Shown piece after piece: positions 43,511-51,540 of a stretch of DNA of 64,000 bases. The stretch is from the IMG/VR virus record IMGVR_UViG_3300042350_004191, positions 146,587-210,586 of that record. One strand, written 5' to 3'. The notes under the pieces are model-generated. The model did no database searches. It was not told the origin of the DNA and saw only the letters and a list, made by a program, of their open reading frames with translations. Every line of letters starts with the position of its first letter. Within the stretch, counting starts at the first letter, position 1. Both the position numbers and the translations under genes were made by a program.

Positions 43511-43945
43511 ATGAATGATTTTGAACAAAAGAAACTCGCAGAGGTATACCAAAAAGTATACAATAAAACAAATTTAAAAGAGGCTATAGATGTTTCTTTT
43601 GGTTCAGACTTCTTAACACAAGTTGTTCCTGCTTGGACAGCCGTAGGTTCTAGTGTTATGGCACTTGTTTTAGGTAACAAATATGCTGAAAATATTAAAA
43701 ATTTCTTAAACAAATTTGTTACAAAATATGCTATTAAAGAATTAGAAAATAATTCAGAGTTTAAAAGTTTAATTGAGCAAAGAACTAAAAGCCAAGACAA
43801 CCAAGAAAGAAGTCAGTTAACGACTAAAATTTATGAAATGATGTTGGATACTTTTGCAAACAGTTCTTTATTATCCAAGCTCAGAATTAGTCCTCAACAA
43901 AAACAACAAATAATTAATACTTTTAGAGAAAAAATAGTGAAATAA
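43511..43945 (+). CDS. Hypothetical late protein with one hydrophobic segment
   Basis: GATAAGTA box upstream; LKEA motif. Confidence 0.6.
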   Translation: MNDFEQKKLAEVYQKVYNKTNLKEAIDVSFGSDFLTQVVPAWTAVGSSVMALVLGNKYAENIKNFLNKFVTKYAIKELENNSEFKSLIEQRTKSQDNQERSQLTTKIYEMMLDTFANSSLLSKLRISPQQKQQIINTFREKIVK

Positions 43946-43984
43946 GTTCTTGCATTATTCCACCTTTTATTATAGAATAAAAGG

Positions 43985-44404
43985 GTGAAAGTTAAACTCT
44001 TAAATATAAATGCAGAGATACCTACTAAAGGTTCACAAAATGCTGCTGGATATGATCTTTATTCAACAGAAGCTGGTGTAATCAAACCCAAGGAAAGAAG
44101 ATTAATTAAGACGGGTTTGGTATTAGAAATACCATCTGGCTATTATGGTAGAATAGCACCAAGATCAGGTTTAGCATTTAAAAGTGGCATAGATGTTATG
44201 GCTGGTGTGATTGATTCTGATTATAGAGGAGAAATTGGAGTGATTCTTTATAATAGTGATAGCTATAGTGATTTTATTTTCGGTATGGGAGATAAAATTG
44301 CACAAATAATTTTTGAAAAACACTATGACTTCGATATGAGTCTTATAAATGATTTAAGTGAAACTAAAAGAGGAGATGGTGGTTTTGGTTCAACTGGAAT
44401 TTAA
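43985..44404 (+). CDS. dut: Trimeric dUTPase
   Basis: AGYDL, PRSGLA, GVIDSDYRGE, KIAQ, RGDGGFGSTG. Confidence 0.97.
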   Translation: MKVKLLNINAEIPTKGSQNAAGYDLYSTEAGVIKPKERRLIKTGLVLEIPSGYYGRIAPRSGLAFKSGIDVMAGVIDSDYRGEIGVILYNSDSYSDFIFGMGDKIAQIIFEKHYDFDMSLINDLSETKRGDGGFGSTGI

Positions 44405-44407
44405 AAA

Positions 44408-45343
44408 ATGAAAAACAAAGCATTATCATATGATGAGGTATATCTAGTTCCGCAATATTCGGAATTAGAAACACGAAAAGAAGCAAACACAAGTATTACA
44501 TTAGGTAAACATACGTTTAAACTACCAGTATTTCCATCAAACATGAAAACTGTTATTGATGAAAAGTGGTCTGAACAGTTTTCCTATAATGGCTATTTTT
44601 ATGCTATGCATAGATTCGATAGTGTGACAGTACCTTTTGTTCAAAAAGCTAACGAAAAAGACTTTAAGGTTATTAGTATTAGCACTGGTGTAAATGACGA
44701 TTCTTATCAAGAATTGTTAGACATTTATTACAAAAACTGGAGAGTAGATTATATCACAATTGACGTAGCTCATGGACATCATTTGAAAGTAAAAAATAGA
44801 ATTGAAGAAATTAGAAAATTATTTCCTAATGTTTTTATTATTGCTGGAAATGTAACCACACCAGAAGGTGTTGAGTTTTTAGAGGCATCTGGTGCAGATG
44901 CTACACGGATCGGTATAGGACCCGGTAAAGCCTGTACGACCAAATACCAAACAGGCTTTCATGTTCCGATGTTCAGTGCATTATTGGAATGCTCACAGGT
45001 AGCCAAAAAGCCAATGATTGCTGATGGTGGTGTAAACTATTATGGAGACGTAGCCAAAGCATTAACTGCTGGAGCAAGTCTTGTAATGGCTGGATCTATG
45101 TTTGCATCATGTTCAGATTCTCCAGCACCTACAATTAACGGAAGAAAGATATATTATGGTTCAGCTAGTTCACACAATAAAGGACATAACAATCATATTG
45201 AAGGAACTTTATTAGAATTAGAAACTCAAATTTCTTTGGAAGAAAGAATTAAAGAAATTACTCAAGCATTGCAAAGTTCAATTAGCTATGCTGGAGGTAA
45301 AGACTTGTCTTGTTTTCAAGGAATAAAATATGTTACAATTTAA
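44408..45343 (+). CDS. guaC: GMP reductase (IMPDH/GMPR barrel)
   Basis: PSNMKT, IDVAHGH, AGNV, GIGPGKACTTK, IADGG, YYGSAS, no CBS domain, 311 aa. Confidence 0.88.
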   Translation: MKNKALSYDEVYLVPQYSELETRKEANTSITLGKHTFKLPVFPSNMKTVIDEKWSEQFSYNGYFYAMHRFDSVTVPFVQKANEKDFKVISISTGVNDDSYQELLDIYYKNWRVDYITIDVAHGHHLKVKNRIEEIRKLFPNVFIIAGNVTTPEGVEFLEASGADATRIGIGPGKACTTKYQTGFHVPMFSALLECSQVAKKPMIADGGVNYYGDVAKALTAGASLVMAGSMFASCSDSPAPTINGRKIYYGSASSHNKGHNNHIEGTLLELETQISLEERIKEITQALQSSISYAGGKDLSCFQGIKYVTI

Positions 45344-45383
45344 CTTGAGATTTTTAAAAATTTCAGGATAAATCATTAATATA

Positions 45384-45395
45384 GATCTTTGACAA
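45384..45395 (+). promoter_or_regulatory. boxA-like antitermination element
   Basis: GATCTTTGACAA just 5' of the structured RNA and tRNA-Ser. Confidence 0.55.
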
Positions 45396-45403
45396 AAAAA
45401 ATC

Positions 45404-45735
45404 ACGATTCGGTAGCAGTTCATTACCGAATCAGGATAACAATCTTTTCTTGTTGGTGCGTTGGGAAAGTTATCCGAGCTAGGGGAGCCAAGCTGCGTTA
45501 AGCTATGATCCTATGCATTGATACAACACAAGATATGGACGAAGTTGTGTTCTGCGTATCGCGGAGCCTTCGTTGAGTGATAGGACAAATTCTAGGATAA
45601 AACCTATCAAAACCAACATTTGGGTTAATTCTGTAAATGGAGCCGACATGAGTATAAGGGTGATCTTAAGCAGTCTTATATCTCCACATACGAGTGGTTG
45701 GAATTAGTCCTGAATCGTCGCGGGTAAACGATTCA
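45404..45735 (+). ncRNA. Unidentified structured non-coding RNA (~330 nt)
   Basis: No long ORF, GC-richer than flanks, many complementary pairs (GATTCGGTA/TACCGAATC, GGATAAC/GTTATCC, TGTTGGT/ACCAACA, TGATAGG/CCTATCA, GAATCGT/ACGATTC). Confidence 0.75.
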
Positions 45736-45743
45736 ATTTTTTA

Positions 45744-45828
45744 GGAAGCGTACTCAAGCGGCTTAAGAGAACTGTCTACTAAACAGTCGAACAGAAATGT
45801 TCCGTGAGTTCGAATCTCACCGCTTCCG
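45744..45828 (+). tRNA. tRNA-Ser (anticodon ACT)
   Basis: Acceptor GGAAGCG/CGCTTCC, anticodon arm ACTGT-CTACTAA-ACAGT, long variable arm GAACA-GAAA-TGTTC, T-loop TTCGAAT, discriminator G. Confidence 0.92.
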
Positions 45829-45860
45829 TATATTAATACCATTGATTTTTTATAACAACC

Positions 45861-46094
45861 TTGTTAATTATTAATGTGAAAAAATACGCAATTAATATTA
45901 AATTCAAAAATCGTAATTTTAAATTAAATATTCTACCAAAAGGACATGATTCTTTTGATTTAGAAATGGAAGTTAAAGGAGTTTTAACAGGTCAAGATTT
46001 TCAAGAACTAAGAAAGTATCTTATTGATGAAGGTTATGTTGATGCAGCGAAAAGTTGGATTAAAGGTGAGAGCTATTTAGCTGAAGAATTATAG
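45861..46094 (+). CDS. Hypothetical protein between tRNAs
   Basis: ORF with plausible composition; true start may be GTG about 15 nt downstream. Confidence 0.55.
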   Translation: MLIINVKKYAINIKFKNRNFKLNILPKGHDSFDLEMEVKGVLTGQDFQELRKYLIDEGYVDAAKSWIKGESYLAEEL

Positions 46095-46168
46095 GGAGTT
46101 ATAGCTCAATTGGTTAGAGTGTCGCCCTGTCACGGCGAAGGTTGCGAGTTCGAGCCTCGTTGACTCCG
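46095..46168 (+). tRNA. tRNA-Asp (GTC)
   Basis: Cloverleaf GGAGTTA/TGACTCC, anticodon arm TCGCC-CTGTCAC-GGCGA, TTCGAGC T-loop. Confidence 0.95.
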
Positions 46169-46315
46169 TTTTAACGATAGGTAAATACTGTTAATGGAGC
46201 TAAAAAAATACAATTTAAAAGAATTGTATGAAATTGCAGAATGGGCTGCTAATATAGGTTTTTATTTCTTAACGAAAGAAATTATCAAGGAAATAAAAAA
46301 CAGGAAAGATAAAAA

Positions 46316-51167: not shown

Positions 51168-51391
51168 ATTTAATAAAAATTATAGAAGAGGAGTTATCTG
51201 AGAAAAAAACTTATGTTGTTTCTAGTTATAAATTTGGATATAAAAAAGAGACACAAGCTTCTTCTGAAAGAGAAGCAAAAAGTAATGTAGCTTTTAATTT
51301 TGCTGAAGAGTTTTCTAAAAAAACTGGAAAACCTGAAGGAGTTCTTAGAAAAGATTTTTTTAATTCTGCTACAGTTAGAATTAAAAAGTAG
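51164..51391 (+). CDS. Hypothetical protein
   Basis: ATGA overlap; IIEEELSE start. Confidence 0.6.
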   Translation: MNLIKIIEEELSEKKTYVVSSYKFGYKKETQASSEREAKSNVAFNFAEEFSKKTGKPEGVLRKDFFNSATVRIKK

Positions 51392-51461
51392 CGGGAGAGG
51401 GAATCGAACCCCCGACCTTCTGGTTATGAGCCAGACTATCTACCACTGATAATATCCCGCA
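51389..51461 (-). tRNA. tRNA-Met (CAT), initiator-like
   Basis: TGCGGGA/TCCCGCT with 1:72 mismatch, TCTGG-CTCATAA-CCAGA, variable loop AGGTC, TTCGATT. Confidence 0.85.
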
Positions 51462-51468
51462 ATTTAAA

Positions 51469-51540
51469 AGCCCCTGTAGAGATTTGCGCTCTACTCTCCC
51501 GATTACAAATCGGGTGCATCGCTATCTATGCTTCAAGGGC
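51469..51540 (-). tRNA. tRNA-Thr (TGT) with non-canonical T-loop
   Basis: GCCCTTG/CAGGGGC, CCCGA-TTTGTAA-TCGGG, T-arm TAGAG-CGCAAAT-CTCTA. Confidence 0.8.

What the first reader, a model, noticed from the sequence alone, without database searches (positions are those of the whole stretch)
45384..45735. Unidentified ~330-nt structured RNA co-transcribed with tRNA-Ser(ACU)
Seen: after a boxA-like 12-mer come a 5' hairpin (GATTCGGTA/TACCGAATC) and GGATAAC/GTTATCC, whose loop segment TGTTGGT (~45451) matches distal ACCAACA (~45612), i.e. a pseudoknot. Further pairs are GATAC..ACAAC/GTTGT..GTATC, TGATAGG/CCTATCA, TGGAG..TATAAG/CTTATA..CTCCA, a possible closing pair TCAGGAT/GTCCTGA, and a 3' hairpin GAATCGT/ACGATTC ending 8 nt before the tRNA. 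GGAGCC occurs three times and GGA about nine times. I cannot match it to tmRNA, RNase P, SRP or 6S. Inference: a possibly new phage RNA class released by tRNA processing; ribozyme, RNP scaffold or protein sponge (e.g. CsrA-type) are all open.
Basis: partly seen in the sequence, partly recalled or inferred. Interest (0 to 1): 0.75.

Follow-up and report, generated by a model that had tools for sequence, protein, structure and literature searches.

The report
New self-pairing phage RNA beside tRNAs
A lake-water jumbo phage encodes, inside its tRNA gene cluster, a conserved and expressed ~220-nt knotted RNA that matches no Rfam family and carries a loop built to pair with a second copy of itself.

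Summary
The finding is real and matches no Rfam 15 family. Window 45403-45618 is the core of a conserved non-coding RNA. I found 38 copies (30 distinct), all in uncultured phage and lake metagenome contigs and none in cellular genome representatives.

Covariation supports helices P1 to P7. Two helices (P3, P4) are made by the loop of P2, which gives a double pseudoknot. Its GATAC/GTATC, ACAAC/GTTGT and TCAGGAT/GTCCTGA pairs are not.

The P7 loop holds a hexamer that changed at least 9 times on the family tree and stays self-complementary in 30 of 30 sequences. This is the signature of a kissing-loop homodimer.

Three lake metatranscriptomes hold contigs over this RNA and none over the flanking genes.

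Copies sit on the same strand as phage tRNA genes. Where no tRNA follows directly, a divergent twister-like ribozyme abuts the core's 3' end, which argues for excision as a stand-alone RNA.

Window 45619-45735 is a clade-specific accessory module plus a terminator-like hairpin.

GGA is not enriched, so a CsrA sponge is unsupported. The boxA reading is doubtful. The function is unknown. The closest analogues in context and in the inferred self-pairing are GOLLD and ROOL.

The parts
45345..45373 (+). Weak sigma-70-like promoter candidate, TTGAGA-N17-ATAAAT, just after the stop codon of the GMP reductase-like gene. Read-through from that gene is the alternative source of the transcript.
   Evidence: Read from the sequence. 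The promoter scan did not call it. Relatives have near-consensus TTGACA-N17-TAnnnT 7-9 nt upstream of P1, but the window lacks that at the equivalent place. Inference only.
45383..45395 (+). The 'boxA-like' motif AGATCTTTGACAA.
   Evidence: Present and conserved upstream of clade-1 homologues. There it sits in the spacer between the -35 and -10 hexamers, so probably upstream of the transcription start. Only 2 exact copies occur in the 210-kb genome.
45403..45618 (+). Conserved core of the RNA family, about 216 nt, spanning P1 to the 3' strand of P4.
   Evidence: Model R1 finds 38 copies (30 distinct) at E from 1e-15 to 1e-58. On alignment A8, 91% of cells pair against 78% for shuffles, 28 of 42 pairs change on both sides, and 0 of 500 shuffles reach any measure.
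45406..45432 (+). P1 hairpin, 45406-14 with 45424-32.
   Evidence: 6 of 7 pairs have compensatory changes and none is broken. 98% of cells pair.
45434..45475 (+). P2 helix, 45434-40 with 45469-75. Its 28-nt loop carries the 5' strands of P3 and P4.
   Evidence: A helix of 5-13 bp is found here in all 29 sequences tested, with about ten unrelated sequences.
45448..45533 (+). P3 pseudoknot helix, TCTTGT 45448-53 with ACAAGA 45528-33.
   Evidence: 5 of 6 pairs change on both sides and 99.4% of cells pair.
45451..45618 (+). P4 pseudoknot helix. The core pairs are 45454-57 with 45612-15. In the window it can extend to 45451-57 with 45612-18, which then competes with P3.
   Evidence: TTGGT always comes with ACCAA, and TTAGT with ACTAA; GTAT/ATAC variants also occur. 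Summed Watson-Crick pairs are 164, against 120 +/- 5 for shuffles.
45478..45496 (+). P5 hairpin with the purine-rich loop GGGAGCCAAG (first GGAGCC copy).
   Evidence: Four pairs, one of them changing on both sides. In most other clades this loop is complementary to the P6a 5' strand and loop, and the two covary (GGAGCC/GGCTCC, GAGTT/AACTC, CGAG/CTCG). The window's clade lacks this complementarity.
45538..45574 (+). P6 (GACGAAG with CTTCGTT) enclosing hairpin P6a (45549-56 with 45560-67). The second GGAGCC copy is the 3' strand of P6a.
   Evidence: P6a has changes on both sides in 6 of 6 pairs. The P6 core ACG/CGT is constant in 28 sequences and becomes TCG/CGA in the L100/L129 clade. The fourth pair varies among A-T, G-C and G-T but is T.T in 9 sequences.
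45578..45609 (+). P7 hairpin, 45578-84 with 45603-09. Its 18-nt A-rich loop carries a self-complementary hexamer at 45591-45596 (TCTAGG here, self-pairing with two G.U).
   Evidence: Stem: 19 distinct versions, and 6 of 6 pairs change on both sides. Hexamer: 26 of 30 are strict palindromes, 30 of 30 are self-complementary if G.U is allowed, and 7 hexamers occur (TCTAGA, CCTAGG, TCCGGA, ACCGGT, TGCGCA, CGGCCG, TCTAGG). No other 6-nt window of the alignment behaves this way. The tree needs at least 9 switches.
45619..45710 (+). Clade-specific 3' accessory module. It is closed by helix 45622-32 with 45700-10 and contains GTAAATGGAGCCGAC (third GGAGCC copy) and a window-specific hairpin, 45638-86.
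   Evidence: Shared only with G004 (L102) and G001 (L112), and partly G005. Absent in G006 and L107, where the tRNA follows the core directly. The closing helix is 11 bp in the window and 10 bp in L102, with one position exchanged between U-A and C-G, and is only partial in L112. Rfam gives no hit up to E=10.
45712..45742 (+). Terminal hairpin GAATCGT/ACGATTC with the conserved 9-nt loop CGCGGGTAA, followed by a run of six T. It looks like a terminator.
   Evidence: The same loop sits on four different stems, in the window, L102, L112 and L137, and also inside upstream modules of other clades. The terminator scan did not call it; by my reading the 9-nt loop exceeds that scan's 3-8 nt loop limit.
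45744..45828 (+). tRNA-Ser with the unusual anticodon ACT, 9 nt after the hairpin. tRNA-Asp follows at 46095-46168.
   Evidence: ARAGORN and Rfam at 51.4 bits. The same tRNA follows the RNA in several relatives.

Best explanation
Window 45403-45618 encodes the core of a previously uncatalogued family of phage non-coding RNAs that live in tRNA/tmRNA gene islands.

Fold (shown by covariation): the RNA forms a compact double pseudoknot. A hairpin (P1) is followed by helix P2. The loop of P2 supplies one continuous strand that pairs with two distant segments (P3, P4). These enclose a P5 hairpin, a long P6/P6a hairpin and a P7 hairpin.

Self-pairing (inferred from sequence): the P7 loop presents a 6-nt self-complementary sequence flanked by adenines. 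Two copies of the RNA most likely pair through it as a kissing-loop homodimer. In clades where the P5 loop and P6a are also complementary, this may form part of a larger assembly.

Processing (inferred from anatomy): the RNA is made as part of the tRNA-cluster transcript and cut out as a stable stand-alone RNA. In the window, the 3' side carries an accessory module, a terminator-like hairpin and, 9 nt later, tRNA-Ser, whose 5' end RNase P would cut. In another clade a twister-like self-cleaving ribozyme abuts the core instead.

Role (my guess): it acts in trans during infection as a self-associating RNA particle or scaffold, as proposed for GOLLD and ROOL. Its target is unknown.
For: Not a catalogued family:
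- No Rfam 15 family matches in the window or over the core in 18 homologous loci.

Conserved family:
- Homologues were found first by BLAST in related 200-kb phage records, then with model R1 and a pattern scan.
- All 23 pattern hits in IMG/VR are true members, as are 19 metagenome hits.

Fold:
- Covariation gives 0 of 500 shuffles reaching the observed values, and about 40% pairing when partners are slid by 1-3 columns.
- G.U pairs are common in the helices, so the constraint acts on the + strand RNA, not on DNA.

Self-pairing loop:
- The hexamer is self-complementary in 30 of 30 sequences, with 7 hexamers and at least 9 switches on the tree. Sister pairs include TCCGGA/CGGCCG and CCTAGG/TCCGGA.
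- In 21 of 30 copies no second copy of the hexamer lies within 300 nt; where one does, by my reading it lies in P4 of the adjacent twister-like element.
- The same reasoning was used to support the intermolecular kissing loops later seen by cryo-EM in OLE and GOLLD (bioRxiv 10.1101/2024.12.08.627333).

Expression:
- Contigs from three independent lake metatranscriptomes lie at 45445-45652, 45417-45566 and 45420-45586.
- Depth is zero at 43900-45212 and 45920-46020, and from 46223 on.

Context and processing:
- tRNAs lie on the same strand within 2.5 kb in 24 of 30 copies.
- Twister-like elements abut the 3' end of the core. Their P4 stems covary, and both tertiary pairings are kept through compensatory changes relative to the Rfam consensus (read).
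Against: - No experiment shows dimerisation. Palindrome maintenance could in principle reflect a dimeric protein or a DNA-level site.
- The window's own hexamer, TCTAGG, self-pairs with only 4 Watson-Crick and 2 G.U pairs.
- The metatranscriptome evidence is a handful of low-depth assembled contigs (depth 2.7-12.8). It carries no strand or end information.
- No 5' or 3' ends are mapped.
- The window lacks the clear promoter that relatives have.
- Only 2 of 7 near-complete related phage records hold the RNA, so it is dispensable.
- The twister-like elements score 31-36 bits, below Rfam's cut-off of 67, and have not been tested for cleavage.
- The function is entirely inferred.
Confidence: 0.6

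Rival explanations
1. It is a protein-binding RNA: a decoy, sponge or RNP scaffold. For example, it could bind a host nuclease or defence protein that targets tRNAs, or the small conserved protein encoded nearby.
For: It has conserved unpaired stretches and lies in tRNA islands. A 72-aa ORF (window 45876-46094) has same-strand homologues near the core in 9 further loci of clades 1 and 3.
Against: No partner is identified. The 72-aa protein has no Pfam or PHROG family and no significant fold match, and it is absent near clade 2/4 copies. GGA is not enriched, so a CsrA-type sponge is unsupported. This rival does not exclude dimerisation.
Confidence: 0.15
2. It is a ribozyme, either self-cleaving or acting in trans on the tRNA-island transcript.
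For: The core is a compact double pseudoknot with conserved junction nucleotides, and it sits among RNAs that need processing.
Against: Rfam 15 has models for several self-cleaving ribozyme classes (a twister model scores here), and none matches the core. Relatives use a separate twister-like element or a tRNA for 3' end formation, which would be redundant if the core cleaved itself. No conserved cleavage-site signature was seen.
Confidence: 0.1
3. It is a cis-acting leader, such as a riboswitch-like sensor or attenuator, that controls transcription into the downstream tRNA genes.
For: It sits upstream of tRNA genes on the same strand, and a terminator-like hairpin with a T-run lies between it and tRNA-Ser.
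Against: The downstream gene differs between copies (Ser, Trp, Gly, Pro, Met tRNAs, ORFs, or nothing within 2.5 kb). In one clade a self-cleaving element would sever it from anything downstream. No alternative terminator/antiterminator pairing is conserved. The 3' hairpin is absent from most copies.
Confidence: 0.08
4. It is a very divergent member of a known RNA class (GOLLD, ROOL, RNase P RNA, tmRNA, 6S) that the Rfam models miss.
For: GOLLD and ROOL are also phage RNAs near tRNA islands.
Against: No hit even at E=10 on a 1-kb search, and none in 18 divergent homologues. The phage already has a standard tmRNA elsewhere, at G000 683-1144. The core is about 220 nt, against more than 500 nt for GOLLD and ROOL.
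Confidence: 0.04
5. It is a DNA-level element, such as an operator, an origin or a packaging site, and not an RNA.
For: It contains a palindromic hexamer, and a palindromic AAAGATCTTT motif lies upstream in relatives.
Against: Helices tolerate G.U pairs, which would be A.C mismatches on the other strand. The pseudoknotted long-range covariation has no meaning in double-stranded DNA. The region is present in RNA libraries while its flanks are not.
Confidence: 0.02

Closest known systems
GOLLD and ROOL RNAs (Rfam RF01998, RF03087)
   Same: They are encoded by phages and prophages, often next to tRNA islands, and have multi-pseudoknot folds of unknown function. They self-assemble through kissing loops, some of which are palindromes that covary while staying palindromic.
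   Different: No sequence or model similarity was found. The core here is about 220 nt, against about 580 to more than 800 nt. Only one symmetric contact is evident here, so a dimer is the minimal reading, not an 8- or 14-mer cage. Assembly is untested.
HIV-1 dimerisation initiation site, and the OLE RNA L9.3 kissing loop
   Same: Each has a hairpin loop that presents a short self-complementary sequence and mediates a symmetric homodimer. In HIV-1 it is a 6-nt sequence flanked by purines (from my own knowledge); in OLE L9.3 the covarying palindrome is an internal tetranucleotide.
   Different: Here the loop is part of a large pseudoknotted RNA, in a DNA phage, in a different biological setting. 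The resemblance is one of mechanism only.
phi29 prohead (packaging) RNA
   Same: It is a phage-encoded RNA of about 120-170 nt that multimerises through loop-loop pairing (mentioned).
   Different: The pRNA uses two different complementary loops to form a ring on the portal and is confined to phi29-like phages. Here there is no link to packaging genes, and the loop is self-complementary.
T4 'species 1 and 2' stable RNAs (RNA C and D) in the T4 tRNA gene cluster
   Same: They are stable RNAs of unknown function, co-transcribed with phage tRNAs and released by tRNA-processing enzymes. This comes from my own knowledge and was not checked here.
   Different: They are shorter. I know of no homology, and none was tested.
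Twister ribozyme, type P1 (RF03160)
   Same: The element that abuts the core in clade 2/4 relatives aligns over the whole model. It has the UAA cleavage-site context, a covarying P4, and both tertiary pairings kept through compensatory changes.
   Different: It scores 31-36 bits against a gathering score of 67. It is not present in the window or anywhere in this genome. Cleavage is untested.

Membership tests
Any Rfam 15 family | Covariance-model score at or above the family's gathering score | tested here: not met
   The window gives only tRNAs at gathering score. At E up to 10 over 45200-46200 there are only tRNAs and chance hits (ALIL 12.5 bits, Pedo-repair 11.8 bits). The core is unmatched in 18 homologous loci.
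GOLLD / ROOL | Match to RF01998 or RF03087 | tested here: not met
   No hit even at E=10, and none at E up to 5 around a clade-2/4 copy.
GOLLD / ROOL | Phage-encoded and located next to tRNA islands | tested here: met
   All copies lie on viral or metagenome contigs. tRNAs lie on the same strand within 2.5 kb in 24 of 30.
GOLLD / ROOL | Homo-oligomeric assembly through kissing loops | not testable with these tools
tmRNA | tRNA-like domain plus tag reading frame (ARAGORN, RF00023) | tested here: not met
   ARAGORN finds no tmRNA in the window. The genome's tmRNA is elsewhere, at G000 683-1144, 143 bits.
RNase P RNA / 6S / SRP RNA | Match to the respective Rfam models | tested here: not met
   No hits at E up to 10.
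CsrB-type CsrA sponge | Many GGA motifs, enriched and exposed in loops | tested here: not met
   GGA occurs 9 times against 5.6 +/- 2.0 in shuffles, p about 0.08. Homologue cores have 3-8. By my reading of the helix coordinates, several GGA lie inside helices such as P2 and P6a.
boxA antitermination element | Transcribed boxA sequence near the 5' end of the RNA | tested here: inconclusive
   By my recall of the rrn boxA consensus, the motif matches it at about 9 of 11 positions. In relatives it lies between the -35 and -10 of the inferred promoter. The transcription start is not mapped in the window.
Twister ribozyme (for the window's 3' module) | Match to a twister model, including the conserved P4 loop | tested here: not met
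   No twister hit in the window at E up to 10. No P4-loop motif occurs anywhere in the genome. Only the GTAA start of the module resembles the relatives' twister-like element.
Kissing-loop homodimer RNAs (works like; not a sequence family) | A loop sequence that stays self-complementary while it varies | tested here: met
   Self-complementary in 30 of 30 sequences, with 7 hexamers and at least 9 switches.

The most novel reading that the evidence does not exclude
This is a new class of natural self-assembling RNA: a third kind of phage tRNA-island RNA after GOLLD and ROOL. At about 220 nt it is far smaller. It forms at least a symmetric dimer through the P7 loop. In clades with P5-loop/P6a complementarity it may form closed higher-order particles. 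Its ends are set by RNase P at a neighbouring tRNA or by a dedicated twister-type ribozyme.
Probability: 0.45. Interest if true: 0.85.

Novelty: new variant of a known kind. Interest (0 to 1): 0.72.

Why it matters
Natural RNAs that assemble with themselves were shown only recently, for OLE, ROOL and GOLLD. Two of those three are phage RNAs next to tRNA islands, and their function is still unknown.

A much smaller, unrelated RNA in the same genomic niche, with the same evolutionary signature of a symmetric RNA-RNA contact, would suggest that self-associating RNAs are a recurrent part of phage translation-related islands.

At about 220 nt it would also be a tractable object for cryo-EM, mutagenesis and function tests.

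The related loci add two further leads. One is a divergent twister subclass used to trim the end of a non-coding RNA. The other is a set of further unannotated structured modules in the same islands.

Tried and rejected
- Synteny through the upstream GMP reductase-like gene failed. A single-protein scan found nothing. 80 loci from an alignment-based scan hold no copy within 3 kb. In relatives the RNA lies 6-12 kb from that gene.
- BLAST against isolated phages found only the tRNA.
- The closest contigs were 98-99% identical or had no DNA, so they gave no covariation.
- The pattern scan of 185,579 species genomes gave 24 hits. All were false by the model. Human-gut metagenome hits were also false.
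- RNAalifold's extension of P3 (TGGTG with TGCATTG) and its 3-bp outer helix were rejected. The first is mostly G.U or one-sided changes and competes with P4. The second is paired in only 68% of cells.
The TCAGGAT/GTCCTGA closing pair was also rejected, because it overlaps P2 and is not kept in L112.
- I considered an intramolecular partner for the P7 loop (ATCCTA at 45509-14). It fails in the TGCGCA and TCCGGA clades (sequences).
- The CsrA-sponge idea was rejected.
- The window's 3' module could be a degenerate twister. Only the GTAA start resembles one, and there is no P4 loop and no Rfam hit.
- The nearby 72-aa protein has no Pfam or PHROG family, no informative atlas hit and no significant PDB fold match.
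- The host is not resolved. The RNR's best isolate match is a Maribacter phage at 49% identity. The sigma-70-like promoters and a Shine-Dalgarno-like site in relatives fit poorly with a Bacteroidota host.

Full report
**What is there**

The window is the last 64 kb of a 210,586-bp, 32% GC, near-complete IMG/VR phage record.

The finding lies between a GMP reductase-like gene (44408-45343, Pfam IMPDH) and tRNA-Ser(ACT) at 45744-45828. All three are on the + strand. The stretch is 40-44% GC against about 30% around it.

Rfam 15 finds only tRNAs in the window at gathering score. On a 1-kb search up to E=10 it finds nothing meaningful over the RNA. ARAGORN finds no tmRNA here, and the phage has a normal tmRNA elsewhere.

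**Finding relatives**

- Isolated phages hold no homologue.
- Synteny with the upstream gene failed.
- BLAST of the RNA against whole records of related ~200-kb phages found copies at 74-78% identity, 6-12 kb from that gene.
- A covariance model from six sequences found two more divergent copies.
- A degenerate pattern drawn from conserved positions then hit 23 IMG/VR stretches, and the model confirms all 23.
- The same pattern found 19 true metagenome contigs among 80 loci returned.
- It found no true hit in 185,579 species genomes.
- In all there are 38 copies, 30 distinct. The window's genome has one copy.
- The window's own sequence is held by lake and freshwater runs.

**Structure**

On the model-based alignment:
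- 91% of cells pair, against 78% for shuffles.
- 28 of 42 pairs change on both sides.
- None of 500 shuffles reaches any measure.
- Sliding partners by 1-3 columns drops pairing to about 40%.

Helix by helix:

| Helix | Window coordinates | Support |
|---|---|---|
| P1 | 45406-14 / 45424-32 | 6 of 7 pairs compensatory, none broken |
| P2 | 45434-40 / 45469-75 | present in all 29 sequences tested, about ten unrelated sequences |
| P3 | 45448-53 / 45528-33 | 5 of 6 pairs compensatory, 99.4% paired |
| P5 | 45478-96 | four pairs, one changing on both sides |
| P6 / P6a | 45538-74 | P6a 6 of 6 pairs compensatory; P6 core compensatory in one clade |
| P7 | 45578-84 / 45603-09 | 6 of 6 pairs compensatory, 19 distinct stems |

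The 5' strands of P3 and P4 are adjacent inside the loop of P2, so the core is a double pseudoknot.

Its closing pair overlaps P2. Frequent G.U pairs place the constraint on the + strand RNA.

**The self-complementary loop**

The 18-nt A-rich P7 loop carries a hexamer at a fixed position (45591-96).
- It is a strict palindrome in 26 of 30 sequences and self-complementary with G.U in all 30.
- Seven hexamers occur. No other 6-nt window of the alignment behaves this way.
- A tree built without the loop needs at least 9 switches, some between sister sequences.
- In most sequences the hexamer has no second copy within 300 nt. An intramolecular partner that I considered fails in several clades.

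A 6-nt palindrome cannot fold on itself, so pairing between two molecules is the simplest reading. The same argument was used for the kissing loops of OLE and GOLLD that cryo-EM then showed. This step is inferred, not shown. The tool for complexes does not take RNA alone.

**Expression**

Contigs from three independent lake metatranscriptomes lie within 45417-45652. Two match without substitutions; one carries a single inserted base. The third is a variant of the G004 type.

Over the flanking genes the four runs show no depth apart from one short cross-match (45272-45306) and tRNA cross-matches. Depth is low, and contigs carry no strand or end information. The RNA is therefore at least strongly enriched over its neighbours in RNA libraries.

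**Context and processing**

- tRNAs lie on the same strand within 2.5 kb in 24 of 30 copies. The next tRNA differs between copies (Ser-ACT, Trp, Gly, Pro, Met).
- Several loci also hold a tmRNA 1-1.5 kb upstream.
- In clades 1, 3a and 5 a near-consensus TTGACA-N17-TAnnnT sits 7-9 nt before P1.
- The window lacks this promoter. It has only a weak candidate at 45345-73, or read-through from the upstream gene.
- The 'boxA-like' AGATCTTTGA lies in the promoter spacer in relatives. That argues against a role as transcribed boxA, but the window's start site is unknown.
- In 12 of 13 clade-2/4 copies a twister-P1-like element begins within the last nucleotides of the core; in one copy a tRNA intervenes. 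Its P4 stem covaries. Both tertiary pairings are kept through compensatory changes relative to the Rfam consensus, which explains the low score of 31-36 bits.
- In other copies a tRNA follows the core directly or within about 40 nt.

Different devices at the same place point to excision of the core as a stand-alone RNA.

**The 3' part of the finding**

Window 45619-45710 is an accessory module closed by its own helix. Only two or three close relatives share it, and others lack it.

It is followed by a hairpin whose 9-nt loop CGCGGGTAA recurs on four different stems and in other modules of these islands. A T-run comes next, and tRNA-Ser begins 9 nt after the hairpin.

The three GGAGCC copies are the P5 loop, the 3' strand of P6a, and part of this module. 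In other clades the P5 loop is complementary to P6a, and the two covary. The window's clade lacks this. I cannot explain that difference.

**What it is and is not**

It is not a member of any Rfam family, not a CsrA sponge and not coding. Indels are not in threes, and change is compensatory.

The best-supported mechanism is a processed, trans-acting, self-pairing RNA. Its purpose is unknown. The consistent placement among tRNA and tmRNA genes suggests a link to translation or tRNA biology, but that is a guess.

A limited literature search found no description of it. A 2023 catalogue of short viral RNA structures (29-151 nt) could contain individual hairpins of it.

Noticed in passing
L101:5547-5630, L103:3094-3177(-), L136:9631-9743 and eight more loci: A divergent twister-P1-like ribozyme subclass. 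The P4 loop is TCTCAAGT, and both tertiary pairings are changed in a compensatory way. It sits directly at the 3' end of the core RNA and scores 31-36 bits, below Rfam's cut-off of 67.
   Followed up: partly
window 45744-45828; also L085, L086, L088, L098: A tRNA-Ser with the unusual anticodon ACT (A at the wobble position) is conserved across several of these phages. It is usually followed by tRNA-Ser(TGA).
   Followed up: no
window 45876-46094 (+); homologues in L102, L107, L109, L112, L178, L111, L193, L106, L139: A conserved 72-aa protein of unknown function is encoded inside the tRNA island, on the same strand and usually within about 1.5 kb of the RNA in clades 1 and 3. It has no Pfam or PHROG family. 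The model (pLDDT 80) has three strands and two helices, with no significant PDB match. It could be a partner of the RNA.
   Followed up: partly
upstream of the core in L118, L115, L136, L105, L129 (type C); L103, L100, L101 (type A); L151, L127, L104 (type B); downstream in L137, L111, L193: Further GC-rich, apparently structured modules of about 100-130 nt with no Rfam match. They are strung together by AT-rich linkers (..TCAT-AAATTAA..) in the same islands. One type shares the TAGTCC...CGCGGGTAA motif with the window's 3' end.
   Followed up: partly
L146:612-1233: A tmRNA match (612-1037) overlaps a group I intron match (1001-1233, 84 bits). The tmRNA gene may be interrupted or followed by an intron.
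   Followed up: no
L085:1830-2050: In G004, a 34-codon hydrophobic ORF with a strong Shine-Dalgarno-like site and a clean terminator is inserted between the RNA and tRNA-Ser(ACT).
   Followed up: no
L106:11592-11808: A second, partial copy of the core (3' half only, loop hexamer CCTAGG) lies about 430 nt downstream of the full copy, whose hexamer is TCCGGA. It includes two masked bases.
   Followed up: no
window 51469-51540 (-): Rfam calls a tRNA here (45.9 bits) that ARAGORN did not list, next to tRNA-Met at 51388-51461.
   Followed up: no
L139:6932-6968 (-): A marginal hit to the abiF RNA motif (37.8 bits against a cut-off of 37) lies immediately 3' of the core in a clade-3 copy.
   Followed up: no
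upstream of the core in L102, L109, L112, L117: The 10-nt palindrome AAAGATCTTT is conserved inside the spacer of the RNA's promoter. It may be a binding site for a regulator.
   Followed up: partly
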